A stretch of DNA of 64,000 nt, taken from sequence record ON190024.1, one strand, 5' to 3'. This document shows positions 3,828 to 14,986 of the stretch, piece after piece. A model generated the notes under the pieces. That model was not told where the DNA came from. It did not search any database and saw only the letters and a list, made by a program, of their open reading frames with translations. Both the position numbers and the translations under genes were made by a program. Positions within the stretch are counted from its first letter, which is position 1. Each line of letters starts with the position of its first letter.

Positions 3828-4358
3828 CTATTTGCGCCCTTTACGATTTGCCTTATTTGCTTTTCTTTTTGCTCTACGCAACTCTTTGCGTTTTGCGATT
3901 TTGTCTGCACGTCTAACTGCATCATAATCCGCAGCACACGACGCAGCAAACGCATCAGGCTTGAAAACGGGTTCTTGACCCACGTATCCCAAGATAGTGC
4001 CCTTAGCTTCGTTATACGCAACGTGTGAACGATGGGATGGGTCTGGGTTGATGTCAACGTGAACTTCAAACCCACGAGTACCACACATTGGCTTAACACG
4101 CAGGGCGGTTTCACCTGCTTTATAGACTTCATTCATCAAACGACTACGAATACCATCTTTACAAGACATGTACGCTGGTTCAGTTTCGATAGATTTGAAT
4201 ACTTGAGCGCCTTTACTACCCTCAAGGTGAATGATGATTACAGTAGCGTAACTAATCATATCACTCTTACGCTTGCTATCACACCCAACATAAATCGTAC
4301 TGTTCGGATGACTGTTATTGATAGCTGTTTCAATTGCTTCCCAATCGAACATTTTCAC
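3828..4358 (-). CDS. RNase H-like nuclease (YkuK/DUF458-like)
   Basis: IYVGCDS, RLMNEV, VHVDIN and KPDAFAASCAAD motifs with conserved acidic residues; basic C-tail. Confidence 0.7.
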   Translation of the reverse strand: MKMFDWEAIETAINNSHPNSTIYVGCDSKRKSDMISYATVIIIHLEGSKGAQVFKSIETEPAYMSCKDGIRSRLMNEVYKAGETALRVKPMCGTRGFEVHVDINPDPSHRSHVAYNEAKGTILGYVGQEPVFKPDAFAASCAADYDAVRRADKIAKRKELRRAKRKANKANRKGRK

Positions 4359-4367
4359 CTCTGTACA

Positions 4368-4393
4368 AAAAAAGGCGGCACAATGCCGCCCCT
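4368..4393 (-). terminator. intrinsic terminator after DUF2828 gene
   Basis: Minus strand GGGGCGGC-attgt-GCCGCC followed by a T-run. Confidence 0.8.
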
Positions 4394-4403
4394 TATCACT
4401 TAT

Positions 4404-5840
4404 TTAAAAGCTGTAGCGATCAACGCCTACAGTTTTCAGCATGATCTTGACTGGCTCAAGCTCACCACCCAACAGTGAAGTCAGGATAGATGGGCTACAA
4501 CCCGATACCAGTGCAGTACCCGCTTCGCCAGCTTTAACCGGAACGTTGCCAAGACGACCACGAATGTTCCAGAAGACTAGTTGTGGCATTTCATAGCCAG
4601 CACGTGCGTACATAGCTTTGATTGCGTCGAAGTTTGCACGTTCGCCGCGACCGTACCAGCCACCACCAGTATTTGCTTGGTCGAATTCCATGTCGCTCAT
4701 GATAAGCAACTTAGTTGGCATTTCTTCTTGTGAAAGATTTGCACGTTTTGCACGTTCTAACAGAACGTTGAAGCACTTACCGATGTTTGTGCTCATGTCT
4801 TCGCCTGATCGATTCATGTTGTCAAGACGCTCTTTTAGTGAGCTACCGCGTAACTGGTGGAAGTGCGGATCGCTTGAGAACGAAATGAACTGATCTTTGA
4901 AGATGCCTTCATTGCGTTCAGCAACATAGATGCCAAGAGACATTGCAACTTGCTTACAAGTCACACCTGAACGATCTGTACCTGCGTTGATTGGCGTGCT
5001 CATAGAGCCAGACACGTCAACAACTGGGATGATGCGCTCATCAGAGCCTTCCATGTAGTTCGGCAGAGCCTTCCATTGCTCGTTCGCTACAGACGCATTA
5101 CCATGACTAACGCTCTTAACGACATCATATGGGAACAAGGCACCAGCGTTGATCTTCGCTTCACCTTTTTGAAGCGACTCGATGTAGCTTGTGTAACGAG
5201 CAGAAGCGTTACGACCGAATGCTTGTTGATAACGAGCCGACGCTACAGATGGCAACTTACCGAAGTCGATTGTATCCCATTCTTGCGCACACATCTTCTG
5301 TTCAACAGTGTCAGACAAAAGTGCTAGAATCTTACGCCACTGCTTCGCAGTTACGCCAAGAGACTTGATTGTGCGCTTGAACACATGACCGTTTTTGCTG
5401 TTCTCGCGTGGGAACCACTTCGCAGCGAGACTGTTCTTGTCGTTTACAATCGCATTTGACCACAATGTGATCGCGTCTTTTTCAAGACTTGTACCGAACG
5501 CAGAAATCAAGTCGTCGAAACGACCTAGTTCTGGAATTTTCGACATTACAGCACGAGCTACGTCAGGCTGCTCATTACAAAGCTTAGTGAATAGAGTACG
5601 GAAAGTACCACGTTCACCCGCACCACCGCGAACATCACGAGACCACAAAAGAATGCGTGTCGCTAGTTCTGGGTTTTCTGCAAACGCACGACCGAACAGT
5701 GTTTTAGACTGATCGTTACCACGCATAGCAGCAATACCGAAGAACAAGTTTAGACACTCGTTACCTGAAGTGCTGTGAGTAACTGCACCGTTTGCTGTAC
5801 GTGAATCGTTAGTGGTCATTGCGTTCATAAATGCTGACAT
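4404..5840 (-). CDS. DUF2828-family TROVE/Ro60-like protein with C-terminal vWA domain
   Basis: N-terminal NGAVTHSTSGNECLNLFF, WSRDVRGGAGER, GRFDDL and AAKWFPRE motifs. vWA MIDAS DVSGS plus MSDMEFD and VFWN. The Ro60/TROVE relationship is from family recall, not from a search. Confidence 0.75.
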   Translation of the reverse strand: MSAFMNAMTTNDSRTANGAVTHSTSGNECLNLFFGIAAMRGNDQSKTLFGRAFAENPELATRILLWSRDVRGGAGERGTFRTLFTKLCNEQPDVARAVMSKIPELGRFDDLISAFGTSLEKDAITLWSNAIVNDKNSLAAKWFPRENSKNGHVFKRTIKSLGVTAKQWRKILALLSDTVEQKMCAQEWDTIDFGKLPSVASARYQQAFGRNASARYTSYIESLQKGEAKINAGALFPYDVVKSVSHGNASVANEQWKALPNYMEGSDERIIPVVDVSGSMSTPINAGTDRSGVTCKQVAMSLGIYVAERNEGIFKDQFISFSSDPHFHQLRGSSLKERLDNMNRSGEDMSTNIGKCFNVLLERAKRANLSQEEMPTKLLIMSDMEFDQANTGGGWYGRGERANFDAIKAMYARAGYEMPQLVFWNIRGRLGNVPVKAGEAGTALVSGCSPSILTSLLGGELEPVKIMLKTVGVDRYSF

Positions 5841-5889
5841 TGTTTATTCCTCATATTAAATTGCTGTAAAATGTCGTTTCGATGTGATG

Positions 5890-5918
5890 ATTATACACGG
5901 ATTTGAACCCGTGTAAAC
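5890..5918 (-). promoter_or_regulatory. T4-early-type promoter of DUF2828 gene
   Basis: GTTTAC-17 nt-TATAAT on the minus strand; the spacer contains an inverted repeat. Confidence 0.85.
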
Positions 5919-5932
5919 ACTTTTTTCAATTT

Positions 5933-6247
5933 TTATCGAAAATTCATTCGAGTTAGATTCGTACCGTTTTCGTGAATCTCAACTAGCACGCGACCGCCCG
6001 TTTCATAAGACGTTCGGAGAGAACGATAACCATGCTCTTCGAAGAATGTACGAATAATAGTCGCACCACGCTTGTCTTTATCAGCAGCGTGAATGGGCAC
6101 TTTTACGATGATAGGGAAACTAGACCCCGACTCAACTGCGTGCATGAATTCTTTCTCACATTCGCTCGTGTAATGCTCGGTAAGAATTCGTTTTTCTTCT
6201 GCTTCACGAGCGTGAATTTGTTGTTTGAGTTCATTATGATTAATCAT
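5933..6247 (-). CDS. hypothetical protein
   Basis: 104-aa ORF with overlapping stop/start to its neighbour. Confidence 0.7.
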   Translation of the reverse strand: MINHNELKQQIHAREAEEKRILTEHYTSECEKEFMHAVESGSSFPIIVKVPIHAADKDKRGATIIRTFFEEHGYRSLRTSYETGGRVLVEIHENGTNLTRMNFR

Positions 6248-6579
6248 TGAAACCCCGCTTGTTTGTTTTCTCGAATTGTCAATTTGACAAAAGAATATGA
6301 GTAATCTCTCATATCACGCGGATCGCCAGAGTAATGCCCGAGCTGTGCGTCGAAGTTATGAAAACCCTCGCGTCGCATGACGCCTTTGATGAGAGACATC
6401 ATTTCATCACAACATTCATTGCGGTCAACATTCACCTGAATCGTGATTGGAAACTGAAACCCAGCAACGCCACCGATTTTACGTTCGATTGCTTTGCGCA
6501 TTTCAACTACGAAGAGTTCTTCACGAGTTGAGCGATTCTGTTTGACTTTTTGAATTAATGTATCGTATAAATTACCCAT
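6244..6579 (-). CDS. hypothetical protein
   Basis: Likely start MGNLYD at 6579, overlapping the upstream stop. Confidence 0.65.
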   Translation of the reverse strand: MGNLYDTLIQKVKQNRSTREELFVVEMRKAIERKIGGVAGFQFPITIQVNVDRNECCDEMMSLIKGVMRREGFHNFDAQLGHYSGDPRDMRDYSYSFVKLTIRENKQAGFQ

Positions 6580-6946
6580 CAATATATTCCTTAATCGGCT
6601 TAGAAAAGTGACGAATACAAGAACTGTCAAGTCGTTTACGACCATCACCATCTATATCAGGTAGTGTGTATTCGTCATTAAACGGCTGACCGCTTTCTTT
6701 CGCAATCTCATAGGCATCGGCTCGATTGAAGTATTCACCACAATAGTTGATAAACCCCTGACCGCGATCCCCGAGTTCGTTTCGATGTTCATATGTACAA
6801 CCTAGTTCTTTCAATAACTTAAAGACTGATTGCATGTTTCGACCGAAATGGCAGCTATCAGCAACAACAATGTCGCGCACTTCACCGTTCGGTAGTGTCA
6901 CTCGAATTGCATTAGCAGCAGACGATATTACATTGACGTGCGACAT
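6572..6946 (-). CDS. conserved phage hypothetical protein
   Basis: QGFINYCGEYFNRADAYEIAKESGQ resembles a common phage family of unknown function. Confidence 0.65.
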   Translation of the reverse strand: MSHVNVISSAANAIRVTLPNGEVRDIVVADSCHFGRNMQSVFKLLKELGCTYEHRNELGDRGQGFINYCGEYFNRADAYEIAKESGQPFNDEYTLPDIDGDGRKRLDSSCIRHFSKPIKEYIDG

Positions 6947-7284
6947 GTATCGTACCTCATAAAAATTGAACCGACGCGCTTATACTGACCAGAGTGAGAA
7001 AGCAACAGAGCCATTTTACTATGACCAACGGGATTGCTTGTCACTAGAACAACAGTGCGCGGAAAATTACGATGATCAATCGCATGAGAGAGAATATCAT
7101 ACCCCTCTCTACCAACATCATCACCTAGGTCATTATCCATGAATAGAGTGATGTCAGTTAGATTTGTGTGCTTGACGAAATTCATACCGTCTTCGAATGT
7201 TCGAATTACGAGTTTTTCATCATCACGTACGTAATCAGACGTGAACTTATCAATGTCGCGCTGATCATCAATCATGACGTGCAT
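6928..7284 (-). CDS. cyclic-phosphate-processing receiver-like domain protein (cREC-like)
   Basis: IDDQR ... MDNDLG ... GYDIL ... TSNPVG pattern of the stand-alone divergent receiver family linked to RNA repair. Confidence 0.7.
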   Translation of the reverse strand: MHVMIDDQRDIDKFTSDYVRDDEKLVIRTFEDGMNFVKHTNLTDITLFMDNDLGDDVGREGYDILSHAIDHRNFPRTVVLVTSNPVGHSKMALLLSHSGQYKRVGSIFMRYDTCRTSM

Positions 7285-7316
7285 AATATTTCTCTTTCGT
7301 TAGTGTTGATAAATAC

Positions 7317-7345
7317 ATCATACAGGTTCAACAAACGGAAGTCAA
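7317..7345 (-). promoter_or_regulatory. sigma70-type early promoter for the 7284->5933 operon
   Basis: TTGACT-17 nt-TATGAT on the minus strand. Confidence 0.75.
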
Positions 7346-7346
7346 C

Positions 7347-7718
7347 ATGAAAGACGAAAAAATTATTTCTTTTGATGAATACCTAAACGAAGGGTGGTTT
7401 GAAAGGCAATGGGCTAGATATAAGGCAGGTGAAGATGCACGCAGCATAAAGAAACTAGCTAAGATGCATACCAAGCTTCTACACATCGAACAGAAAGCAA
7501 AGCAAAACAAATACCGATACGAAGCCGTACGGTTCAACTACGAACACATCAAAATGAATGTGCTCGATGCCAAGAAGCTAATTAACAAGCTGCGATACAA
7601 GAAAGGGATTAGTCAAGAGCTAGTTCAGGCAATGGATAAACTAGACATTGAACTTGATAGACTCAACGACTTTGCCGTTGAGGGATTGCATGAGCTAATG
7701 ATTCAACATAAGCTATAA
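7347..7718 (+). CDS. hypothetical late protein, possible internal head protein
   Basis: TAAATA late-type promoter upstream, N-terminus MKDEKIISFDEYLNE, followed by a terminator. Confidence 0.65.
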   Translation: MKDEKIISFDEYLNEGWFERQWARYKAGEDARSIKKLAKMHTKLLHIEQKAKQNKYRYEAVRFNYEHIKMNVLDAKKLINKLRYKKGISQELVQAMDKLDIELDRLNDFAVEGLHELMIQHKL

Positions 7719-7721
7719 AAG

Positions 7722-7748
7722 AAAAGCCCCGTTTTGGGGCTTTTTTTG
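7722..7748. terminator. bidirectional intrinsic terminator
   Basis: AAAAGCCCC-gtttt-GGGGCTTTTTTTT between convergent genes. Confidence 0.8.
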
Positions 7749-7749
7749 T

Positions 7750-7962
7750 TTAATGTGAGTGGCGTAACTTCTTTTCGATCATTCGATCTACAATCGTGGA
7801 GTACATAAGATGCTCTTTGTAGTATTTCTCATCAACTCGGTTGCACTGGAATTGTCGAAAATCTTTGCGTAAGCGGGCAATGAATTTATTAAGTGCTTTG
7901 CGCACTTTGCAAACTTCAGACAGTTCCATGCTTTTTAGTGTATCTTCAGAAAGTATTTCCAT
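7750..7962 (-). CDS. hypothetical protein
   Basis: 70-aa ORF with GAGG SD. Confidence 0.6.
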   Translation of the reverse strand: MEILSEDTLKSMELSEVCKVRKALNKFIARLRKDFRQFQCNRVDEKYYKEHLMYSTIVDRMIEKKLRHSH

Positions 7963-7991
7963 GATTGTTCACCTCTTAGTTAATAGAATAC

Positions 7992-8036
7992 GGGAGACAC
8001 GGGAATCGAACCCATTGCCTTGACCACATATCTCCC
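7992..8036 (-). ncRNA. miniature tRNA-like element (acceptor + T arm, no anticodon arm, no CCA)
   Basis: GGGAGATA-TGTGGTCAAGGCAA-TGGG-TTCGATT-CCCG-TGTCTCCC. Confidence 0.45.
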
Positions 8037-8060
8037 ACTGAGAGTTACGGCAATCTGAGG

Positions 8061-8291
8061 TTAGTGTGCTAGACGCATCAAACGGCGCATACGTTCGCGT
8101 TCAGATAAATCTTCCAAATTTTCTTGTTTCACCTCTTTGATTTCTTCTTCGGGTTCTTCAGCTTCCTTTTTGATTTTTTCAGCATCGGGACCGATGTTTT
8201 TCCAAAGCGAAGCATTTCGCCAGTTATCGTTAAAACCATTACCTAAACCGCGCCCTTCACGCGCATGAGATTTTTGATGAATGTTTTTCAT
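8061..8291 (-). CDS. hypothetical small charged protein
   Basis: 76-aa ORF whose start overlaps the upstream stop; part of it lies in the 127-bp duplication. Confidence 0.6.
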   Translation of the reverse strand: MKNIHQKSHAREGRGLGNGFNDNWRNASLWKNIGPDAEKIKKEAEEPEEEIKEVKQENLEDLSERERMRRLMRLAH

Positions 8292-8600
8292 TATTCGTTA
8301 GATTTCTTTGTTACTTGTCTTGCTACGCCAACAGCAGCAGCACCAGCAGCTACTTTAGCACCTGTTTTTGCCGNNNNNNNNNNNNNNNNNNNNNNNNNNN
8401 NNNNNNNNNNNNNNNNNNNNNNNNNNNNNNNNNNNNNNNNNNNNNNNNNNNNNNNNNNNNNNNNNNNNNNNNNACCGCGCCCTTCACGCGCATGAGATTT
8501 TTGATGAATGTTTTTCATTATTCGTTAGATTTCTTTGTTACTTGTCTTGCTACGCCAACAGCAGCAGCACCAGCAGCTACTTTAGCACCTGTTTTTGCCG
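8247..8600. other. assembly gap (100 N) flanked by an exact 127-bp duplication
   Basis: 8247-8373 is identical to 8474-8600. Confidence 0.9.
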
Positions 8601-8724
8601 CCTTACCGGCTTTTTTAGCGCCCGACTTGATACGATCTTTTACAGAACGTTTCTTTTTCTTTTTGTCTTCTGGGCGCGACTCTTCGATTTCTGACATGAA
8701 TTTGTCAAAGGTTTTCTCACTCAT
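8518..8724 (-). CDS. small basic late protein, possible internal head protein
   Basis: MSEKTFDKFMSEIEE N-terminus, Lys/Ala-rich, TAAATA upstream. Confidence 0.65.
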   Translation of the reverse strand: MSEKTFDKFMSEIEESRPEDKKKKKRSVKDRIKSGAKKAGKAAKTGAKVAAGAAAVGVARQVTKKSNE

Positions 8725-8761
8725 GACCTATCTCCAGTTAATTGAGTTCATTTGTATTTAG

Positions 8762-9139
8762 TCATGAAAAATCGAACTTTCGGGTTAATTGCACATCAAA
8801 TTTGCGCTCGAAACGACAACGCTCAGTACCGTAAAGCACATCATCGAGCGTAAAGCGTTTACGTTTTTGCGTGTGTAGGTTCATATAACGCTCTAGAGCA
8901 GCTTCTGAGTCGAATTCAATACGTTCACAACGTCTTTGTTCGGATGTCTGAGAATAATCGCTTACAACGCGATACAGAAACAATCCGCGTATCACAACTG
9001 CATTAAGAGAATTTGAAGTTTTTACAGTAACGCCGTCAATATCACCGAATTCACTCATGGTAAAGATTATCTCTGAGTCTGGCATTTCAGCGACGCGCTT
9101 CATTTTAGCTATTGATGTTCGTTTATTAGATTTGTACAT
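8762..9139 (-). CDS. hypothetical protein
   Basis: 125-aa ORF with GAGG SD. Confidence 0.6.
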   Translation of the reverse strand: MYKSNKRTSIAKMKRVAEMPDSEIIFTMSEFGDIDGVTVKTSNSLNAVVIRGLFLYRVVSDYSQTSEQRRCERIEFDSEAALERYMNLHTQKRKRFTLDDVLYGTERCRFERKFDVQLTRKFDFS

Positions 9140-9187
9140 TTTATCACCTCATAACGACTGTACACGATTTATCAGACGCCATAAACA

Positions 9188-9211
9188 AAAAAACCTGCTC
9201 AAGGCAGGTTC
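9188..9211 (-). terminator. terminator ending the stable-RNA cluster
   Basis: AACCTGC-cttga-GCAGGTT followed by a T-run on the minus strand. Confidence 0.8.
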
Positions 9212-9226
9212 TAATGTGCAATACAC

Positions 9227-9472
9227 AGACATTCGAGAATTGTTTTATCGTCTTTCCTTAAATCTCAATTGACTATCTCGATGTTTCTCATCAAGAGAAT
9301 ACCCATGATTCGGCATGAGACCTATTTCGTTTAACAGTACGAACACCGTCTTAATGGTCATTTCCTACCACGAGAATGCGACAGGCTCACGTCATCACTG
9401 AGAAAGCAGCTAGTGCGCCTCATTACTATTAAAGTTTGCTTCTTTGATTAGTAATATTGCTGTACAATGTCT
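9227..9472 (-). ncRNA. candidate ncRNA B1 (246 nt, end-paired, CAGCAA motif)
   Basis: Terminal helix AGACATT/AATGTCT; paralogous to 11502-11715 with a covarying hairpin. Confidence 0.65.
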
Positions 9473-9483
9473 TATTGCGAATT

Positions 9484-9572
9484 TGGCGGAGATACTGGGA
9501 ATCGAACCCAGAGAACGCTATTAACGTCCGACACCTTAGCAGGGTGCTGTCATACCTTTAGACCATATCTCC
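9484..9572 (-). tRNA. tRNA-Ser(GCT)
   Basis: Cloverleaf with long variable arm, loop CTGCTAA, encoded CCA. Confidence 0.95.
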
Positions 9573-9577
9573 GTAGA

Positions 9578-9757
9578 TCATTTCTTACCACGCTCTGCTT
9601 TGCTAATCTCGACAGCAGCGATTTGCGCGTTGGCTTCTTTCTCAGTGTCATGAGTACCAAGTACTCGACCTTTAGATGAAAGAGCAACCCATTTGTCGCC
9701 ACGCTTCTCGACTTTCTCAACAAGCTTGTGGTATTCATCAAAAGTTTTAAGTTTCAT
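9578..9757 (-). CDS. 59-aa late protein, possible internal head protein
   Basis: Manual translation MKLKTFDEYHKLVEKVEKRGDKWVALSSKGRVLGTHDTEKEANAQIAAVEISKAERGKK; perfect TATAAATA at 9783-9790. Confidence 0.7.
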   Translation of the reverse strand: MKLKTFDEYHKLVEKVEKRGDKWVALSSKGRVLGTHDTEKEANAQIAAVEISKAERGKK

Positions 9758-9782
9758 TTGTCATCCCTCAGTTAGTTTATTG

Positions 9783-9790
9783 TATTTATA
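9783..9790 (-). promoter_or_regulatory. T4 late promoter TATAAATA
   Basis: Exact consensus upstream of 9757. Confidence 0.8.
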
Positions 9791-10013
9791 ACTGAACGAC
9801 TTTTAAACAGTGGCATGCTGCTCTCATGCTCAGACACATATTTGCTCTTATTGCAGGCGTGTGCCACGCGCAGCGCAGATCCCTTTTGATAATTTAATGA
9901 CCAGCGGGACTCTTAGCAGGTCTTACACATAGCCTTTCAGCTATATCTTCTTTTAAGACCATAGTGTCGTACGGTCTAATCACTCTCTTTCGATTCGCGT
10001 TGCTAAGTGAATT

Positions 10014-10090
10014 TGGTGCCCAACCCGAGATTCGAACTCGGATCATCTAGTGTTTGAAACTAGCGCCTCTGCCAATTGGACTAGTTGGGC
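10014..10090 (-). tRNA. tRNA-Leu(CAA)
   Basis: Cloverleaf, loop TTCAAAC, CCA. Confidence 0.92.
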
Positions 10091-10205
10091 TTGAATGAGC
10101 TGCCGCAACTCTTTAATCCCTAACGCCTGTCAGCTTTCGCCCGGCTGAGACCGTTTTCAACGGCGGTAGTCTAGCTTCGTGTAGAACGCGGCTTATGCTA
10201 GAGTT

Positions 10206-10282
10206 TGGTACGCACGGGCGGATTCGAACCGCCATCCCTGAGATTTTAAGCCTCATGCCTCTGCCAATTGGACCACGTGCGC
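10206..10282 (-). tRNA. tRNA-Leu(TAA)
   Basis: Cloverleaf, loop CTTAAAA, CCA. Confidence 0.92.
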
Positions 10283-10284
10283 AG

Positions 10285-10358
10285 TGGAGCCCGAACAGAG
10301 AATCGAACTCTGACCGCGGGATTTGCAATCCCTCATACTTCCATTATACGATTCGGGC
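10285..10358 (-). tRNA. tRNA-Cys(GCA)
   Basis: Cloverleaf, loop TTGCAAA, U73-CCA. Confidence 0.92.
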
Positions 10359-10461
10359 AATATGTTAGTGCATTGCATGAGCTACTGGCGATCTTAATGG
10401 GTATTTCAAGCATTCAGAATTCCCATGCGCTACTACAATGCTTTTTTCGCTAAATGCACTT

Positions 10462-10539
10462 TGGGGTGACAGACGGGGATCGAACCCGCATCTTCCGGAA
10501 TCACAACCCGGGGGTATTTCCACTTCACCCACTGCCACA
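10462..10539 (-). tRNA. tRNA-His(GTG)
   Basis: Cloverleaf, loop TTGTGAT, C73; the genomic -1 base reads T rather than G. Confidence 0.88.
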
Positions 10540-10592
10540 CCAAAGTACACTTTGGGATGTTTACGACATCAAACGAATGCGCTCCCTGTGCA

Positions 10593-10832
10593 TTAATCAG
10601 TTTTCTTTAAGTAGATACTATCAGGCGATAGCTCTCTCGTAAACATATTTTTGAAATAAATTTCGATGTCATCAGAAGTTGTTGAAGACTCAATTTCAAG
10701 AGCACGTTCTAAAATCTTACCGCGTTTATAACCAGCGCGCCAACAGTCAAACATAAGTCTGTCCATGCGTTTCAGTTTTTCAATTTGGTTTTGATTTACG
10801 TATTCGTGAGTTTCAAGTAATACAGGCGTCAT
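10593..10832 (-). CDS. hypothetical protein
   Basis: 79-aa ORF between tRNAs. Confidence 0.6.
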   Translation of the reverse strand: MTPVLLETHEYVNQNQIEKLKRMDRLMFDCWRAGYKRGKILERALEIESSTTSDDIEIYFKNMFTRELSPDSIYLKKTD

Positions 10833-10855
10833 AATTTATTTCTCATCATAAAGAA

Positions 10856-10929
10856 TGGTAGTCCCTAGTGGAATCGAGCCACTTCTTTCTCTGTGTAAAA
10901 GAGACGTACTGCCATTATACTAAGGGACC
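10856..10929 (-). tRNA. tRNA-Val(TAC)
   Basis: Cloverleaf, loop TTTACAC, T-loop CTCGATT, CCA. Confidence 0.9.
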
Positions 10930-10934
10930 AAAAT

Positions 10935-11008
10935 TGGAGCGGGTACACGGACTCGAACCGAGACGAACGACTTGGAAGGACGTCATGCTACCATTACATC
11001 ATACCCGC
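10935..11008 (-). tRNA. tRNA-Gly(TCC)
   Basis: Loop CTTCCAA, single mismatches in the anticodon and T stems, CCA. Confidence 0.88.
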
Positions 11009-11012
11009 ATTG

Positions 11013-11207
11013 TTAATCTGAAGCGTCGAACAAATCACGTATTGCACGCAGATTCGTAAGCTCTACAGTAAGTGTTCTTATAAAGAACGGGTTGGTCTCT
11101 TTCGCGAGACGATTTTCAACACAGCGAATCTTATCGCGTATGTTGCCCTTGCTTAGTGTAAAGTAGTCATGCTTCTTATCCTCTTTGCTTGAATTTGGTG
11201 GAGACAC
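11013..11207 (-). CDS. hypothetical protein (true start uncertain)
   Basis: Short ORF between tRNAs; the annotated start overlaps a tRNA. Confidence 0.45.
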   Translation of the reverse strand: MSPPNSSKEDKKHDYFTLSKGNIRDKIRCVENRLAKETNPFFIRTLTVELTNLRAIRDLFDASD

Positions 11208-11271
11208 CGATACTCGAAATCGGATCTAATGGCTTATGAGACCATTGCTCTACCACTTGAGCTACATCTCC
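11196..11271 (-). tRNA. tRNA-CAT (probably elongator Met)
   Basis: Cloverleaf, loop CTCATAA, CCA. Confidence 0.9.
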
Positions 11272-11501
11272 AAAAGTAGTAATTAACTCATTTAATCGCA
11301 CACGGGCTGACACCATATATTCATGGTCTGAGCGAGGAACCACATAGTGGGTACTATTACCTCATCTTAGTTTTGATTGTTTTACATGACGATAACTAGA
11401 AACGTTCATAATAATGCCACGCGATACTTCCTGTATCACGGCTAACTGAGTTAGCATAAAGTGCCTTTCGGCTGTAGTGTCGTTTCCGACGAATTAAGTA
11501 C

Positions 11502-11715
11502 AGACAATACCGAAGTGTTTTTTCGTCTTTAACATGAATCGGAGTTGACTATCTTGTTGCTTCTCAACAAGCAAATATCGTCTGTTTCAGCGACGCGCCT
11601 ATCTGACTATTTCTAGGCAGAGAGAATCTTTCCTTTCAAGCTGCACCGAAGCACTGCCCAGGTTAAGATCATTACCATTTTTAGTAAGATTTTAATTTGT
11701 TGCTGTATATTGTCT
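11502..11715 (-). ncRNA. candidate ncRNA B2 (214 nt, end-paired, CAGCAA motif)
   Basis: Terminal helix AGACAATA/TATTGTCT; paralog of 9227-9472. Confidence 0.65.
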
Positions 11716-11776
11716 CTCAAACCATGCTCGTGATATGCCGAAGCAAGTATCATTCGCCGCATGATAGAGCTTAATC

Positions 11777-11852
11777 TGGCATCCCCAGAGGGATTCGAAC
11801 CCACAACCCACGACTTAGAAGGTCGTTGCTCTTCCAATTGAGCTATGAGGAC
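11777..11852 (-). tRNA. tRNA-Arg(TCT)
   Basis: Cloverleaf, loop CTTCTAA, CCA. Confidence 0.93.
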
Positions 11853-11929
11853 GTTGAAAAGAATTCGATCCATGAGCTATTGCGTAGAAGATGGTAGTAA
11901 AGAGACTCTACACTCATGTGATCGAAATT

Positions 11930-12004
11930 TGGTGGACACGCAGGGAGTCGAACCCTATCTTCCTCATTGCAAGTGAGGCGCTTTCCCAATTAAGCTAACG
12001 GCCC
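11930..12004 (-). tRNA. tRNA-Ala(TGC), irregular acceptor stem
   Basis: Loop CTTGCAA and G3:U70 present; the acceptor needs a bulge to pair. Confidence 0.8.
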
Positions 12005-12011
12005 ATAATTA

Positions 12012-12221
12012 TTACAACTGTGTGATTGAAATATGATCCCAGCCGTATAGACCTTCAAGCTCTTCAATCGGCTCACCAACAATATCAGAAATATATTCAG
12101 CAACTTTTGCTTCAATTTCTTCATCAGATAGTTTTTCATCAACGGAAAAAGCATCTTCGTTATTGTTGCCACCGAAATAGCCACCAATGTCATATTCACA
12201 CCATATTGAAATATAGTTCAT
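12012..12221 (-). CDS. small acidic hypothetical protein
   Basis: Start MNYISIWCEY with GAGA SD. Confidence 0.65.
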   Translation of the reverse strand: MNYISIWCEYDIGGYFGGNNNEDAFSVDEKLSDEEIEAKVAEYISDIVGEPIEELEGLYGWDHISITQL

Positions 12222-12246
12222 GTTATTCTCACAGTTGTTTAGAAAA

Positions 12247-12322
12247 TGGTGCCCTGACACGGATTTGAACCGCGAACCTGCTCATTACAAGTGAGCTGCA
12301 CTGCCAGTTGTGCTATCAGGGC
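12247..12322 (-). tRNA. tRNA-Thr(TGT)
   Basis: Cloverleaf, loop CTTGTAA, CCA. Confidence 0.95.
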
Positions 12323-12360
12323 GTTACTGAGTGTTATTACTTGCGTCGTCCAGACCAGAG

Positions 12361-12449
12361 ATACCAACTCTGAAAGGGAATCGAACCCCAAACATTTCTT
12401 TTCGTAAGAAGAATATTAGTAATTGTTTGCTGAAAACACTCTTCGGTAT
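12361..12449 (-). ncRNA. candidate small RNA: motif hairpin plus T-arm
   Basis: GAAGAGT-GTTTTCAGCAAAC...-ATTCTTC hairpin, then GGGG-TTCGATT-CCCT; ATACC/GGTAT closing. Confidence 0.55.
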
Positions 12450-12450
12450 T

Positions 12451-12524
12451 TGGCAGGGGATAACGGATTCGAACCGGTACTGCGTGAGTCAAAGTCACGT
12501 ATGCTGCCTTTACATCAATCCCCT
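12451..12524 (-). tRNA. tRNA-Gln(TTG)
   Basis: Cloverleaf, loop CTTTGAC, G73-CCA. Confidence 0.92.
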
Positions 12525-12543
12525 ATTATTCTTAAATTATCTT

Positions 12544-12619
12544 TGGCGGAACCGACGGGTTTCGAACCCGCTACCTTCTCCGTGACAGGGAGACATGCAA
12601 CCACTTACACCTCGGCTCC
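12544..12619 (-). tRNA. tRNA-Asp(GTC)
   Basis: Cloverleaf, loop CTGTCAC, CCA. Confidence 0.95.
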
Positions 12620-12842
12620 CCAAAGACAACTTAATAGTTGCTTTGTGCTCGTGCAAACCAAACACTAGCTGAACGACTTCTTGATTTCTTAGTTTTACTA
12701 CACATTCCCTCGCTAAAGGGCATCATCGTTCTTGTTTTTAACAAATGCTATGAAAGTGAGATCTTGCTATGCAGGAGGTTTCAAATCTCTGCACACAAGC
12801 AGACATCGCAACCAACGCTCTCAAACATTGTCATGGTCAAAC

Positions 12843-12917
12843 TGGCGCTCCGTGTAGGACTCGAACCTACAGCCTTTCGGTTAACAGCCGATTGCTCCAC
12901 CATTGAGCTAACGAAGC
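12843..12917 (-). tRNA. tRNA-Asn(GTT)
   Basis: Cloverleaf, loop CTGTTAA, CCA. Confidence 0.95.
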
Positions 12918-12920
12918 GTA

Positions 12921-13298
12921 TTATTTATTCGATGCGTGTTCTTCTCTGTGGCAATTCGCACATAACATGATGCATTTATCAAGCTCTGGGACAATTCTCT
13001 CCCATCGTTTGCAACCGCCACTAGCAATGCCAAAGTCTTTCCCATTCGGGTCTGTATGATGAAACTCTAATGCTTCAATGCACTTATCATACCCACATCG
13101 TTCACAGCAACCACCTTTATATTCAACCGCCCTCAATTTAGTACGGCGTCTATATGATACCACTGCTTCTTTATTCTTTTGTTTTCTCTCGTCATCTGTT
13201 CGAAATTTCAATTTCTTACCGTTGTATAAACCAGCACATCGACGACTACAGAATTTATTGTTGTGTGTTTCTGCACCACACTCTAAGCATTTATTCAT
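12921..13298 (-). CDS. small HNH endonuclease
   Basis: CxxC/CxxxC zinc motifs; CERCGY...LEFHH...KCIMLCANCHREEH. Confidence 0.8.
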   Translation of the reverse strand: MNKCLECGAETHNNKFCSRRCAGLYNGKKLKFRTDDERKQKNKEAVVSYRRRTKLRAVEYKGGCCERCGYDKCIEALEFHHTDPNGKDFGIASGGCKRWERIVPELDKCIMLCANCHREEHASNK

Positions 13299-13439
13299 CT
13301 GAATTACTCAATTAATAGTTAATAAAGTAACCCAAAGGAGAGTATAGCCCGCCACATTCGTAAGTGAATGACTCTATTACTACTTAGCAATTACATTCAA
13401 GCGTTACCAAGAACCATGCCACGTAGCTTTAAATTAAAC

Positions 13440-13497
13440 AGCAATCCTTTTCTCTTTTTCCAAATAAAAGTTTTGTATTGTTTGCTGAAAGATTGCT
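13440..13497 (-). ncRNA. candidate 58-nt end-paired RNA with CAGCAA motif
   Basis: AGCAATC-TTTCAGCAAAC...AAAAG-GATTGCT. Confidence 0.55.
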
Positions 13498-13503
13498 TAA
13501 TTC

Positions 13504-13577
13504 TGGCAGGGACATAGAGATTCGAACTCTAACGAACGGGTTTGGAATCCGTCATGCTGCCGTTACATCATGTCCCT
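13504..13577 (-). tRNA. tRNA-Trp(CCA)
   Basis: Cloverleaf, loop TTCCAAA, G73-CCA. Confidence 0.92.
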
Positions 13578-13583
13578 AAAATT

Positions 13584-13657
13584 TGGTAGCCCCAGACAGA
13601 CTCGAACTGTCAACGTGCGATTATCGGTCGCGTGTTTTACCGTTAAACTATGGAGCT
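13584..13657 (-). tRNA. tRNA-Ile(GAT)
   Basis: Cloverleaf, loop CCGATAA, CCA. Confidence 0.9.
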
Positions 13658-13721
13658 AAAGTGAGCACATTTCAGTGCTCGTGTTAATCGGTTAAGTGAC
13701 TAAACTTCCCGGTTAACTAAT

Positions 13722-13820
13722 TGGCGGAAGACTAGGGATTCGAACCCTAACATCACCTCCCGGTGACCGACGGTTTTCAAGACCGTTGCCGCTACCCAGA
13801 ATCTTTCGGCTAAGCCTTCC
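13722..13820 (-). tRNA. tRNA-Ser(TGA), enlarged D loop
   Basis: Loop CTTGAAA, long variable arm, CCA. Confidence 0.9.
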
Positions 13821-13827
13821 ATTAATT

Positions 13828-13904
13828 TGGTTGCGTGGGGCTGGATTCGAACCAGCGTTCTCCGGCTTATGAGACCGACGAGATGACCACTTCTCTACCC
13901 CGCA
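13828..13904 (-). tRNA. tRNA-Met(CAT), initiator-like
   Basis: Resembles bacterial tRNA-fMet body (GCGGGG...CCCC-CGCAACCA); loop CTCATAA. Confidence 0.88.
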
Positions 13905-13913
13905 ATTATTCAA

Positions 13914-14001
13914 CAGCTTGCGTTCTTTGGTCTGTTTATCGCTGTCTGAACTGAGTTCGCCGAGCGATCAATAGATTAAGTTAAATTGCAGTATGCAAGC
14001 T
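13914..14001 (-). ncRNA. candidate end-paired RNA with CTGCAA motif variant
   Basis: AGCTTGC-ATACTGCAAT...ATCGCT/AGCGAT hairpin...AAAGAAC-GCAAGCT. Confidence 0.5.
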
Positions 14002-14006
14002 AAATT

Positions 14007-14092
14007 TGGTGGAGCGTAGAGGAATCGAACCTCTCTTCCCATTACGGGACACGGATTTACAGTCCGCTGCGCCACCTTGGCGCATACGCTCC
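14007..14092 (-). tRNA. tRNA-Tyr(GTA)
   Basis: Loop CTGTAAA, variable arm, CCA. Confidence 0.92.
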
Positions 14093-14098
14093 GGAATT

Positions 14099-14172
14099 TG
14101 GTACTCGATACGGGAGTCGAACCCGTCCTACTTCCTTGAAAGGGAAGTGACCTACCGATAGTCGAATCGAGC
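14099..14172 (-). tRNA. tRNA-Glu(TTC)
   Basis: Cloverleaf, loop CTTTCAA, CCA. Confidence 0.92.
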
Positions 14173-14235
14173 ATTAAATTGTATATTGATTTGCAAGCTA
14201 ATCAACTCGCAAAGCGATACACAATGTATCTAATT

Positions 14236-14312
14236 TGGTACGCCGCCCTGGACTCGAACCAGACACCTGAGAGTTAAAAGCTCCCTGCTCTTCCATGATG
14301 AGCTACCGACGC
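14236..14312 (-). tRNA. tRNA-Lys(TTT) copy 1
   Basis: Loop CTTTTAA, CCA. Confidence 0.9.
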
Positions 14313-14323
14313 ATTATAAAATC

Positions 14324-14398
14324 TGGTGGGTCGCATGAGATTCGAACTCACACCGGTCTGGTTAAAAGCCAGATGTACTACCGTTATACGAACGACCC
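14324..14398 (-). tRNA. tRNA-Lys(TTT) copy 2
   Basis: Loop CTTTTAA, CCA; body unrelated to copy 1. Confidence 0.92.
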
Positions 14399-14404
14399 AG
14401 AATG

Positions 14405-14479
14405 TGGTGCACCCCCTCGGAATCGAACCGAGCACTGCGGGACTTCAATCCGCCGCTTTTCCTGATAAGCTAAGGGTGC
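14405..14479 (-). tRNA. tRNA-Phe(GAA)
   Basis: Loop TTGAAGT, CCA. Confidence 0.88.
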
Positions 14480-14480
14480 A

Positions 14481-14557
14481 TGGTACGCATGAAGAGATTC
14501 GAACTCTTATCATTCGGCTTCTAAGACCGACGCCTCTGCCAATTGGGCTACATGCGC
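14481..14557 (-). tRNA. tRNA-Leu(TAG)
   Basis: Loop CTTAGAA, CCA. Confidence 0.92.
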
Positions 14558-14584
14558 ATTAAATTTTGTAAACTTCTTTTCTTC

Positions 14585-14614
14585 ATTGTACATGATGTTT
14601 ATATCGTTGTAAAC
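14585..14614 (-). promoter_or_regulatory. early-type promoter inside the tRNA cluster
   Basis: GTTTAC(A)...TACAAT with upstream A-tract; GATGTTTA/TAAACATC inverted repeat overlaps it. Confidence 0.7.
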
Positions 14615-14779
14615 ATCTTTTTTTGAATTTATTTTGAAGAACTTAACGTTTTCATTTTTCTATGTGTTAATCTTAACACTCGATCAAGACATCTTAAACA
14701 CTAATTTGTGAAAAAGTTCGTTAAATTCTATCATCACGACAGTACTTAACGAGATACGGTCCTAAGCGTATCAAATCAA

Positions 14780-14907
14780 TTCAGAATGGTGAGACTTGAA
14801 CTCACTTCGAGTAATAGCGTAAACTAACAGTTGTTGCCAGAGGCTATCAATTATTCTCTACCGAGTATGTTGCAACTCTGCATTTCCCCATTTCTAGGCA
14901 TTCTGAA
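14780..14907 (-). ncRNA. tRNA-like element without CCA
   Basis: TTCAGAATG/CATTCTGAA terminal helix, T-arm GTGAG-TTCAAGT-CTCAC, internal GATAGC/GCTATT hairpin. Confidence 0.5.
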
Positions 14908-14910
14908 ATA

Positions 14911-14986
14911 TGGCACCCAATACAAGATTCGAACTTGTAACCTTCGCCTTCGTAGGGCGCTGCTCTTCCAATTGAGCTAATCGGGC
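14911..14986 (-). tRNA. tRNA-Arg(ACG)
   Basis: Loop CTACGAA, CCA. Confidence 0.92.

What the first reader, a model, noticed from the sequence alone, without database searches (positions are those of the whole stretch)
5841..5918. Motif copy in the 5' UTR of the Ro60-like gene suggests autoregulation
Between the early promoter (GTTTAC-17-TATAAT) and the GAGG SD lies CGACATTTTACAGCAAT, nearly identical to the 5' end of ncRNA B1 (AGACATTGTACAGCAAT). Inference: the protein represses its own translation unless titrated by the RNA family. The promoter spacer is also a palindrome, TACACGG-GTTCAAAT-CCGTGTA, that mimics a tRNA T-arm in read-through transcripts from the upstream cREC-like operon, where I saw no terminator.
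Basis: partly seen in the sequence, partly recalled or inferred. Interest (0 to 1): 0.72.

Follow-up and report, generated by a model that had tools for sequence, protein, structure and literature searches.

The report
Gene leader mimics Ro-like partner RNA
The ribosome-binding site of a phage gene for a Ro60-like RNA-binding protein sits inside a miniature copy of a small-RNA signature that accompanies this gene family in many phages and bacteria, so feedback control of the protein by its own RNA-binding activity is plausible but unproven.

Summary
The window is a KVP40-like Vibrio phage (100% identical to PVA8). On the minus strand, 5918-5841 holds GTTTAC-17-TATAAT, a dyad across the spacer, the 17-mer (15/17 to B1's 5' end), GAGG and the ATG of a DUF2828/DUF7788 gene. 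An AlphaFold model of that protein matches only Ro60/TROVE structures.

The 17-mer is half of a larger element: a 6-bp stem, one free base, TACAGCAA, a loop, the complementary arm, then N-G. In the leader the Shine-Dalgarno lies in the loop and the AUG in the 3' arm.

This signature defines an RNA family absent from Rfam 15. B1, B2 and two further window RNAs belong to it. It sits on the gene's strand beside DUF2828 genes in 78 other phage contigs and 73 genome bins: 72% and 65% of core sites have arms, against 11% in controls. In bacteria the last copy often ends 14-40 nt before the start codon.

Leader mimicry of the partner RNA is therefore well supported. Autorepression is a reasonable inference (about 0.45) and is untested. 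The leader hairpin is weak, and three phage lineages have lost it to a homing-endonuclease cassette.

The tRNA T-arm reading of the spacer dyad is not supported: the dyad is conserved, the T-loop sequence is not.

The parts
5913..5918 (-). -35 hexamer GTTTAC of a T4-type early-like sigma-70 promoter, with an A-rich tract just upstream (5919-5940)
   Evidence: 5 of 6 columns are invariant in 13 phages.
5890..5895 (-). -10 hexamer TATAAT. The transcription start predicted from it is about 5883, so the element below begins about 8 nt into the mRNA.
   Evidence: 6 of 6 columns are invariant in 13 phages. The start site is inferred, not mapped.
5894..5915 (.). Dyad TACACGG / CCGTGTA across the promoter spacer (7 bp, 8-nt loop). 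Its function is unknown. It is transcribed only in read-through RNA from the upstream operon.
   Evidence: It is the strongest dyad among 22 promoter-like sites. 90% of cells are paired over 14 phages, with 3 pairs changed on both sides. The loop sequence is not conserved.
5834..5876 (-). Leader element, a mini member of the stem-ACAGCAA RNA family. Its parts are: 5' arm GACATT 5875-5870; free T 5869; core TACAGCAA 5868-5861; loop 5860-5842 holding the SD GAGG at 5852-5849; 3' arm AATGTC 5841-5836, which contains the start codon at 5840-5838; then AG 5835-5834.
   Evidence: Model R1, built without any Vibrio-phage sequence, scores it 15.8 bits. That is the second-best hit in the window, with E=0.18 window-wide and 5.6e-4 for the 200 nt around it.
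4404..5840 (-). Gene for a 478-aa DUF2828 + DUF7788 protein (KVP40.0300 'RNA-binding protein'). It has the Ro60/TROVE fold with a vWA MIDAS motif (D275, S277, S279, T351, D383 invariant).
   Evidence: Pfam; annotation; AF2 model with pLDDT 82; the top 7 Foldseek PDB hits are all Ro60/TROVE, E 1.5e-9 to 6e-5; invariant columns.
9224..9473 (-). B1, a long family member just 3' of tRNA-Ser. Arms are GACATT (9471-9466) and AATGTC (9233-9228), followed by TG. An intrinsic terminator follows at 9190-9212.
   Evidence: It is found only in the same 50 Vibrio phages.
11499..11716 (-). B2, a paralogue of B1 lying 3' of tRNA-Arg. Arms are GACAAT / ATTGTC, a compensatory swap relative to B1.
13439..13497 (-). 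Short family member just 3' of tRNA-Trp. Arms are GCAATC / GATTGC and the core is TTCAGCAA.
   Evidence: R1 scores it 24.6 bits, E=0.001, the best hit in the window. Its orthologue in QD01, PVA23 and VS1 has arms GTAATC / GATTAC.
13914..14001 (-). Probable family member just 3' of tRNA-Tyr. Arms are AGCTTGC / GCAAGCT and the core is TACTGCAA.
   Evidence: R1 scores it 13.9 bits, E=0.55. This is weaker support.

Best explanation
The leader of the DUF2828 (Ro60-fold) gene is a miniature member of the RNA family that this protein family travels with. The family signature is a closing stem whose first pair is G-C, one free base, the invariant (N)ACAGCAA, a variable insert, the complementary arm, and N-G.

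In the large members (B1, B2 and the two short RNAs in the tRNA cluster) the insert carries whatever those RNAs do. In the leader the insert is only 19 nt and contains the Shine-Dalgarno sequence, and the 3' arm contains the AUG.

The inferred mechanism has three steps:
1. The protein recognises the stem plus ACAGCAA junction on its partner RNAs.
2. When free protein exceeds partner RNA, it also clamps the intrinsically weak leader stem.
3. The clamped stem hides the SD and AUG from the 30S subunit, so translation falls (autogenous repression by mimicry, with the B RNAs as competitors).

What is shown: the element's anatomy, its conservation, the existence and covariation of the RNA family, its exclusive genomic linkage to DUF2828 genes, and the Ro60 fold. 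What is inferred: protein-RNA binding, the sign of the effect (repression), and titration by B RNAs.
For: (1) Anatomy. The leader meets every sequence feature of the family, and its SD and AUG lie inside the element.

(2) Selection. 13 of 15 motif columns are invariant in 13 phages whose flanking leader is variable.

(3) The RNA family is real.
- There are 73 distinct elements with 28 different arm pairs. Arm position 1 is G-C in 25 of 28, and 69 of 73 have NG after the 3' arm.
- A seventh pair that the search did not require forms in 25 of 27 sequences, using 5 pair types.
- B1 and B2 differ by a compensatory swap in the arms.

(4) Linkage to the protein.
- Next to DUF2828 genes, 48 of 67 TACAGCAA sites on the gene strand have arms, against 0 of 8 on the opposite strand, in 78 IMG/VR loci.
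- In 73 genome bins the counts are 89 of 137 against 4 of 43.
- In 118 unrelated viral contigs the rate is 10.9%.
- No protein neighbour of the PVA8 gene is conserved in those 151 loci.

(5) Copies next to the ribosome-binding site recur.
- In 16 of 41 genome loci the last element ends 14-52 nt before the start codon, in the pattern arm-YG-SD-ATG. L255 and L276 carry 31-33-nt mini elements.
- Phage contig L046 has one 17 nt before its ATG.
- R1 scores those that were outside its training set at 19.9-30.7 bits.

(6) An independent model ranks the PVA8 leader second in the whole window.

(7) The protein has the Ro60 fold, and Ro60 proteins bind a stem next to a conserved motif in Y RNAs encoded beside them (PMC4201824, PMC12135203).

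(8) Phage D479, which lacks B1 by BLAST, has a variant leader, GAAAT...ATTTC-TG, with its start codon context changed accordingly. This is suggestive only.
Against: - The leader hairpin alone is weak: about -3 kcal/mol, z-score about 0, and it is the minimum-free-energy fold in 5 of 7 phages.
- Within the KVP40-like clade the leader stem never varies, so it gives no covariation. Its 3' arm is also constrained by coding (ATG-TC), so 6 nt of complementarity could be partly luck. An arm pair within 60 nt of a TACAGCA site arises somewhere in 16% of simulated windows.
- The R1 score is modest, at E=0.18 window-wide. The F86, 1.081.O and D479 leaders do not reach E<=2, and neither does L027.
- Three lineages (the D482 clade, CZ01 and VH1_2019) replaced the promoter and leader with a homing-endonuclease cassette and persist, so the element is dispensable.
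- Most marine phage orthologues carry the RNAs 3' of the gene and have no leader copy.
- There are no binding, expression or transcript-end data of any kind.
Confidence: 0.45

Rival explanations
1. The leader is an operon relic or processing signal. In the ancestral arrangement, still seen in bacteria, the partner RNAs are transcribed in tandem just upstream of the gene and cut out of the same transcript. The KVP40-type leader is then a shrunken last copy. It is kept because it marks a processing or stability site for a host or phage RNase, or simply supplies the SD and AUG context. It would not be a feedback operator.
For: - Tandem arrays lie directly 5' of the gene in genome bins, up to 5 copies in L262.
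- In the window, B1, B3 and B4 begin 5-12 nt after a tRNA 3' end and B2 about 60 nt after one, so they must be excised from precursors.
- The leader can be lost without killing the phage.
Against: - The PVA8 leader has its own strong promoter about 8 nt upstream, so no excision from a precursor is needed.
- Excising the element would remove the SD and AUG.
- The 5' arm and core are invariant while the flanks drift, which a decaying relic would not show.
Confidence: 0.2
2. The protein regulates positively or protectively. It binds the leader but stabilises the mRNA or shields it from exonucleases, rather than repressing translation.
For: A phage Ro60 with its Y-like RNAs attenuates PNPase-mediated degradation in vitro (PMC12135203, read). 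The element sits at the extreme 5' end of the predicted primary transcript.
Against: The SD lies in the loop and the AUG in the stem, which is the geometry of an occluding operator. In bacteria the 3' arm abuts the SD within 3-10 nt, where a ~55-kDa ring would clash with the 30S subunit.
Confidence: 0.15
3. The motif is a DNA-level signal. It could be part of a homing-endonuclease target, or an antisense MotA-box-like site (ATTGCTGTA on the plus strand resembles the T4 MotA box), and the similarity to B1 and B2 reflects repeated DNA sites.
For: A GIY-YIG/homing-endonuclease cassette has replaced exactly this intergenic region in three lineages. The plus-strand sequence matches 8 of 9 positions of the T4 MotA-box consensus as I recall it.
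Against: - No suitably spaced -10 element follows any of the three plus-strand copies (read).
- A DNA site does not explain arm covariation, strand specificity (0 of 8 and 4 of 43 on the opposite strand), or the spread across bacteria that lack T4-type transcription.
Confidence: 0.05
4. The resemblance is due to chance, with no function.
For: Short AT-rich motifs recur. A 14-base version of the motif has more than 118 matches in IMG/VR, and arm pairs occur at about 11% of core sites by chance.
Against: - The shuffle probability is 0.005.
- The motif is invariant across diverged phages.
- It is the second-best hit of an independent model.
- The same arrangement appears at unrelated orthologues.
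Confidence: 0.03

Closest known systems
Ro60 (Rsr) with Y RNAs / YrlA, including phage versions (mycobacteriophages, Thermus phage phiLo Yrl1/Yrl2)
   Same: - A ring-shaped TROVE+vWA-fold protein is encoded next to small RNAs.
- Those RNAs pair their 5' and 3' ends into a stem that adjoins a short conserved motif.
- The inserts vary, and some family members carry tRNA-like T and D arms (D525 L084:1722, L046:4910 and 5756, L256, L244).
- Several paralogous RNAs occur per genome (PMC4201824, PMC12135203).
   Different: - The protein belongs to Pfam DUF2828/DUF7788, not the TROVE family. Sequence similarity to solved Ro60 proteins is marginal (E=0.15).
- The conserved RNA motif is (N)ACAGCAA directly after the 5' arm, not GNCGAAN0-1G / CGAA in a bulge.
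- No Rfam 15 model, Y RNA or otherwise, matches at its gathering score; two regions searched down to E<=10 and E<=5 gave only chance-level hits to unrelated families.
- As far as I know and could find, no Ro60 gene has been reported to carry a partner-RNA mimic in its own ribosome-binding site.
Autogenous translational operators that mimic the protein's main RNA ligand (E. coli thrS leader mimicking the tRNA-Thr anticodon arm; ribosomal-protein leaders such as S8, L1, S15, L20; T4 gp32, gp43, RegA). Listed from established knowledge.
   Same: A copy of the ligand's recognition feature overlaps the SD and AUG of the protein's own mRNA. The abundant primary ligand would compete with the operator, giving feedback.
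   Different: Those cases are shown biochemically and this one is sequence inference only. Here the operator stem is very weak on its own, and the start codon itself forms part of the stem.
T4 stable RNAs species 1 and 2 (rnaC, rnaD) in the tRNA gene cluster. Recalled from memory as a lead only.
   Same: They are small stable RNAs of unknown function, co-transcribed with and processed from a T4-type phage tRNA cluster.
   Different: B1 finds only Vibrio schizoT4 phages in 50,697 phage records. As far as I know, T4 has no DUF2828 gene.

Membership tests
Stem-ACAGCAA RNA family linked to DUF2828 genes (defined here) | A closing stem of at least 6 Watson-Crick pairs whose outermost pair is G-C | tested here: met
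   The leader pairs GACATT (5875-5870) with AATGTC (5841-5836), and G5875 pairs with C5836.
Stem-ACAGCAA RNA family linked to DUF2828 genes (defined here) | One unpaired base, then NACAGCAA immediately 3' of the 5' arm | tested here: met
   T, then TACAGCAA at 5868-5861. ACAGCAA is invariant in the 27-sequence alignment A7.
Stem-ACAGCAA RNA family linked to DUF2828 genes (defined here) | The 3' arm is followed by N-G | tested here: met
   AG lies at 5835-5834. The G is the first base of codon 3 and stays G in all leader-bearing phages, where the codon is GCA, GTA or GCT. 69 of 73 family members have NG.
Stem-ACAGCAA RNA family linked to DUF2828 genes (defined here) | Lies on the same strand as, and close to, a DUF2828 gene | tested here: met
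   It overlaps the gene's start. Family-wide strand bias is shown.
Stem-ACAGCAA RNA family linked to DUF2828 genes (defined here) | Recognised by a covariance model built without any related (Vibrio phage) sequence | tested here: inconclusive
   It scores 15.8 bits and is the second-best of all hits in 128 kb. E is 0.18 window-wide and 5.6e-4 when only the 200 nt around the leader are searched. The orthologous F86 and 1.081.O leaders fall below E=2.
Stem-ACAGCAA RNA family linked to DUF2828 genes (defined here) | Bound by the DUF2828 protein | not testable with these tools
   Genomic linkage only.
Y RNA / YrlA (Rfam; Chen et al. 2014) | A Ro-binding helix with the GNCGAAN0-1G (CGAA) motif, and a match to the family model | tested here: not met
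   The core is ACAGCAA. No Rfam hit reaches the gathering score, and none appears at E<=10 over 5700-12300. The motif definition comes from PMC4201824 and PMC12135203.
Y RNA / YrlA (Rfam; Chen et al. 2014) | Encoded beside a Ro60-fold protein gene, with the 5' and 3' ends paired | tested here: met
Autogenous translational operator by ligand mimicry | The operator overlaps the SD and/or start codon and resembles the protein's presumed primary RNA ligand | tested here: met
   The SD is in the loop and the AUG in the 3' arm. The leader matches B1 at 15 of 17 positions and shares its architecture.
Autogenous translational operator by ligand mimicry | The protein binds the operator and lowers its own translation, and the ligand competes | not testable with these tools
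   No experiment was possible.
   - The palindrome's register gives 7 bp with an 8-nt loop, and the T-loop register gives only 2 bp.
- The loop is TTAAAAT in PVA23 and TTATAAT in phi-ST2. It becomes GGGTTTAAACCC in nt-1 and is unrelated in VH7D, D525, F86 and 1.081.O.
- ARAGORN and the Rfam tRNA model are silent there.
Ro60 / TROVE protein family (for the encoded protein) | A helical-repeat ring plus a C-terminal vWA domain with a MIDAS motif | tested here: met
   The AF2 model has pLDDT 82 and pTM 0.80. The top 7 PDB matches are all Ro60/TROVE over about 510-570 columns, with TM 0.49-0.62. D275, S277, S279, T351 and D383 are invariant.
Ro60 / TROVE protein family (for the encoded protein) | Sequence membership in Pfam TROVE | tested here: not met
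   Pfam gives only DUF7788 (1.2e-45) and DUF2828 (1e-29). A profile search against PDB TROVE chains gives E=0.15.
T4-type early promoter | GTTTAC, a 17-nt spacer, TATAAT, and an upstream A-tract | tested here: met
   The consensus is from established T4 knowledge. Promoter activity was not tested.

The most novel reading that the evidence does not exclude
DUF2828 proteins are a second, undescribed branch of Ro60-like RNPs. Their cognate 'Y-like' RNAs are defined by a closing stem plus the invariant ACAGCAA. These RNAs occur in phages, many bacterial phyla and some archaeal bins, with inserts ranging from nothing to whole tRNA-like domains. A miniature copy placed over the ribosome-binding site forms a feedback operator, which would be the first autoregulatory circuit known for any Ro-family protein.
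Probability: 0.35. Interest if true: 0.85.

Novelty: new variant of a known kind. Interest (0 to 1): 0.72.

Why it matters
Ro60/Y-RNA particles are conserved from bacteria to humans. How their stoichiometry is set, and what the many divergent TROVE-like proteins of phages bind, remain largely open questions.

This locus offers three things:
- a concrete RNA signature for a whole uncharacterised protein family (DUF2828/DUF7788), which makes its ligands predictable from sequence in phages and gut, rumen and marine bacteria;
- a compact 43-nt candidate operator, with natural loss-of-leader variants, that makes feedback control directly testable with standard binding and reporter assays;
- an explanation for several unannotated gaps in the tRNA clusters of KVP40-like phages.

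If the RNA family holds up, it also deserves a curated covariance model.

Tried and rejected
- **Exact motif upstream of orthologues.** It is absent from about 75 IMG/VR loci with 41-54% identical proteins. This looked like a refutation until the structural descriptor was used.
- **IMG/VR scan for GACATTNTACAGCAA.** It returned more than 118 mostly random matches and was uninformative, so I reused them as a background control.
- **Relaxed descriptor ([TA]ACAGCA with G-U pairs allowed).** It was too noisy, giving 56 hits on the opposite strand. I kept the strict version.
- **'B3' candidates from a 3-mismatch search.** Some proved to be true members with new arms (D525, F86, QD01). MAFFT alignment of their interiors with B1 and B2 was meaningless.
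- **Generic search for other leader-versus-locus repeats in other clades.** It found nothing convincing. The GGTTCAAATCCGTGTA match to the tRNA-Gly T-arm is only the universal T-loop consensus.
- **B RNA acting as an antisense regulator of the leader.** Rejected, because the complementary blocks in B1's 3' end are not collinear with the leader (read).
- **Conserved protein partners.** Neither DUF458/YkuK, cREC nor the three small ORFs is found next to orthologues.
- **Pfam on L046's neighbours.** Uninformative.
- **Literature.** I found nothing on DUF2828 RNAs or on KVP40 small RNAs.
- **First simulation script.** It timed out, and the second failed on the N run. The third ran.

Full report
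**What the window is.** Positions 4000-8000 are 100% identical to Vibrio phage PVA8 and 98.5% identical to KVP40 (Schizotequatrovirus). Genes in this region run on the minus strand. The ORF at 4404-5840 (478 aa) matches Pfam DUF7788 (1.2e-45) and DUF2828 (1e-29). RefSeq annotates it in KVP40 as 'RNA-binding protein'. Upstream on the same strand lie three small ORFs and a cREC_REC gene. Downstream lie a DUF458/RNase H-like gene and tail-fibre gene gp37. A cluster of 27 tRNA genes occupies 9484-17066.

**The observation.** Read on the minus strand, 5918-5841 contains these features:
- GTTTAC (5918-5913), a 17-nt spacer, and TATAAT (5895-5890), preceded by an A-rich tract;
- the 17-mer CGACATTTTACAGCAAT (5876-5860);
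- GAGG (5852-5849) and the ATG (5840-5838).

The 17-mer matches B1's AGACATTGTACAGCAAT (9472-9456) at 15 of 17 positions. B2's copy lies at 11715-11699. The dyad TACACGG/CCGTGTA spans the spacer and borrows bases from both hexamers. No terminator-like site lies on this strand between 7722 and 4965.

**Whether it is more than chance.** Only 0.5% of 1000 shuffles of the segment reach a 15/17 match to B1 or B2. I collected the orthologous region from 13 further related Vibrio phages, with DNA identity to PVA8 down to 67%. In the 13 phages that keep the promoter, 13 of 15 motif columns are invariant. The leader segments on either side have 2/12 and 0/8 invariant columns. The motif is therefore as conserved as the -35 and -10 hexamers.

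**What the motif really is.** B1 (9224-9473) and B2 (11499-11716) are paralogues. In both, the 5' GACAWT pairs with a 3' AWTGTC, and the two RNAs differ by a compensatory T/A swap. The shared plan is a 6-nt arm, N, TACAGCAA, an insert, the complementary arm, and TG.

The leader follows the same plan. GACATT, T and TACAGCAA are followed by 19 nt containing GAGG, then AATGTC (which contains the ATG), then AG. Of 24 ACAGCAA sites in the window, only B1, B2 and the leader have a complementary arm downstream. Relatives carry further members with different arms: GAGTGT/ACACTC in D525 and F86, with a tRNA-like T-arm inside, and GTAATC/GATTAC in QD01, PVA23 and VS1.

**Generalisation.** The exact 17-mer is absent upstream of about 75 phage orthologues from IMG/VR with 41-54% protein identity. 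The structural signature, however, is abundant there.
- Among distinct TACAGCAA sites in those 78 loci, 48 of 67 on the gene's strand have an exact 6-nt arm pair within 330 nt. On the other strand the count is 0 of 8.
- In 73 loci from bacterial and archaeal genome bins that encode orthologues (31-48% identity), the counts are 89 of 137 against 4 of 43, and 50 of the 73 loci have at least one element. The bins include Erysipelotrichaceae, Lachnospiraceae, Oscillospiraceae, Saccharibacteria, Roseiflexaceae and Fusobacterium necrophorum ATCC 25286.
- The background rate in 118 unrelated viral contigs is 10.9%.
- Across the phage loci there are 73 distinct elements with 28 different arm pairs. 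The first pair is G-C in 25 of 28. All four Watson-Crick pair types occur at every other arm position. N-G follows the 3' arm in 69 of 73.
- In an alignment of 27 short elements, a seventh pair that the search did not impose forms in 25 of 27 sequences, using five pair types.
- Sizes fall into four classes: mini (31-48 nt), short (51-60), medium with tRNA-like T and D arms (104-129), and long (211-269).
- No Rfam 15 family matches at its gathering score. Two regions were also searched at permissive E-values (window 5700-12300 and L262:2450-3000) and gave only chance-level hits to unrelated families. Only embedded tRNA-like inserts hit RF00005.
- None of the PVA8 gene's protein neighbours recurs in the 151 other loci. 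The RNA element is the only conserved companion of DUF2828.

**The protein.** An AlphaFold2 model built from 39 orthologues (pLDDT 82, pTM 0.80) was compared with the PDB. The seven best matches are all Ro60/TROVE structures: Thermus phage phiLo, Deinococcus Rsr, Xenopus Ro with RNA, and human Ro60. E-values run from 1.5e-9 to 6e-5 and TM-scores from 0.49 to 0.62 over nearly full length. Isolated vWA domains follow. A DxSxS...T...D MIDAS motif is invariant. At the sequence level the link is marginal (E=0.15). 'Ro60-like' is therefore correct for the fold but not for Pfam membership. Canonical Ro60 partners carry GNCGAAN0-1G / CGAA next to the terminal stem (PMC4201824, PMC12135203). The motif here is ACAGCAA.

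**Copies at the ribosome-binding site elsewhere.** In the genome bins the elements stand in tandem directly 5' of the gene. In 16 of 41 loci the last one ends 14-52 nt before the start codon. The typical pattern is 3' arm, YG, a purine-rich SD, then ATG, as in these loci:

| Locus | Gap to start codon | Note |
|---|---|---|
| L244 | 18 nt | |
| L260 | 18 nt | |
| L282 | 14 nt | |
| L255 | 17 nt | 33-nt mini element |
| L276 | 26 nt | 31-nt mini element |

Phage contig L046 has a 47-nt element (GTTTGC...GCAAAC-TG) ending 17 nt before its ATG.

I built a covariance model, R1, from 27 short elements, none of them from Vibrio phages. It scores gene-proximal elements that were outside its training set at 19.9-30.7 bits, and all 19 of its hits in eight loci lie on the gene strand. 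In the window, its results were as follows:
- The best hit is a new member at 13439-13497 (24.6 bits, E=0.001).
- The second-best hit is the leader at 5834-5876 (15.8 bits). E is 0.18 for the whole window and 5.6e-4 for the 200 nt around the leader.
- A probable fourth RNA lies at 13914-14001 (13.9 bits).

**Mechanism.** The most economical reading is that the protein recognises the stem plus ACAGCAA junction of its partner RNAs. The leader presents the same junction with the SD in its loop and the AUG in its 3' arm. Excess protein would then clamp the leader and block initiation, with the abundant tRNA-cluster RNAs as competitors. This is the classic ligand-mimicry feedback seen in the thrS leader, ribosomal-protein leaders and T4 gp32.

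The steps that are shown are the anatomy, the conservation, the reality of the RNA family, its linkage to the gene, and the protein fold. The steps that are inferred are binding, repression and titration.

Several results count against the model.
- The leader hairpin is worth only about -3 kcal/mol and is no better than shuffled sequence.
- The stem never varies within the clade, and its 3' arm is fixed by coding.
- Model scores for the F86, 1.081.O and D479 leaders are below threshold.
- A GIY-YIG/homing-endonuclease cassette has replaced the promoter, leader and first codons in the D482 clade, CZ01 and VH1_2019.

I put the full autoregulation model at about 0.45. The narrower claim, that the leader is a selected member or mimic of the partner-RNA family, I put at about 0.85.

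**The spacer dyad.** It is real and specific to this promoter: -10.5 kcal/mol against -5 or weaker for 21 other promoter-like sites. Dyad symmetry is kept across 14 phages, with 90% of cells paired and three pairs changed on both sides, although the outer pairs come free from the hexamers. The T-loop look-alike GGTTCAAATCC is confined to the closest relatives. It reads GGTTAAAATCC in PVA23, GGTTATAATCC in phi-ST2 and GGGTTTAAACCC in nt-1, and is unrelated in VH7D, D525, F86 and 1.081.O. Its register also does not fit a T-arm, and no tRNA model responds to it. D479 lacks the promoter but still has a GC-rich hairpin just upstream of its element. This hints at an RNA-level role in read-through transcripts, such as processing or 3'-end protection, but I could not test it. 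The T-arm mimicry claim is not supported.

**Novelty.** Ro60-Y RNA pairs, including phage ones, and autogenous control by mimicry are both known kinds. Three things appear to be new: the RNA signature for the DUF2828 branch, its breadth, and its placement over the gene's own ribosome-binding site. I found no description of these in Rfam 15 or in the searchable literature. That search cannot cover subscription journals.

Noticed in passing
window 13439-13497 (-) and 13914-14001 (-): Two further unannotated small RNAs of the stem-ACAGCAA family lie just 3' of tRNA-Trp and tRNA-Tyr. Their cores are the variants TTCAGCAA and TACTGCAA. R1 scores them 24.6 and 13.9 bits.
   Followed up: partly
window 15785-15897 (-) and 17451-17567 (-): These are tRNA-like RNAs of 113-117 nt with intact acceptor, D and T arms and CCA, but a ~45-nt insert where the anticodon arm should be. 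Rfam's tRNA model scores them 49.8 and 55.8 bits, ARAGORN is silent, and KVP40 annotates the first as a tRNA pseudogene. They could be intron-bearing tRNAs or tRNA-mimic RNAs.
   Followed up: no
window 11933-12004 (-): The Rfam tRNA model hits here (44.9 bits) but ARAGORN makes no call. KVP40 annotates it as 'tRNA-Pseudo-1'.
   Followed up: no
L087:7363-7989, L212:7363-7974, L211:8186-8821 (D482, CZ01, VH1_2019): The intergenic region in front of the DUF2828 gene is a homing-endonuclease insertion site. A cassette on the opposite strand replaces the promoter, the leader and the first three codons. It brings a new promoter-like sequence and leaves TTACAGCAAT fused to the new ATG.
   Followed up: partly
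window 5791-5798 (-) and 5757-5785 (-): A second TACAGCAA lies inside the ORF (codons R-T-A-N). Next to it is a small hairpin, GTTAC-T-CACAGCAC-TTCAG-GTAAC, that R1 scores at 10.6 bits. This is probably a coding coincidence, but it lies within 80 nt of the leader element.
   Followed up: no
window 8374-8473: A run of 100 N (masked or unresolved sequence) lies in the small-ORF region between the Ro-like operon and the tRNA cluster.
   Followed up: no
window 5894-5915 (+): Read on the plus strand, the spacer dyad followed by the T-rich complement of the promoter's A-tract is flagged as terminator-like. It could stop antisense transcription into the upstream operon.
   Followed up: no
window 7719-7747: A strong bidirectional terminator-like hairpin (13 pairs) lies between the plus-strand ORF 7347-7718 and the minus-strand genes. 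It marks the upstream boundary of the cREC/Ro-like transcription unit, whose promoter-like site is at 7346-7317.
   Followed up: no
L244:2807-2907; L256:2797-2909; L046:4910-5013 and 5756-5882; L084:1722-1831: Some family members enclose a complete or nearly complete tRNA-like domain between the arms. In L244 the insert scores 51 bits with the tRNA model. This parallels the tRNA mimicry of YrlA, but with a different protein-binding module.
   Followed up: partly
L262:2568-2940: This Solobacterium bin carries five tandem elements in front of its DUF2828 gene. The last has the core TACAGCGAA and ends 27 nt before the ATG.
   Followed up: partly
L049:11317-11738, L246:71-424, L248:5527-5966: tmRNA genes and tRNA arrays lie within a few kb of DUF2828 genes in several contigs. 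This suggests that many of the 'bacterial' loci are large phages or prophages.
   Followed up: no
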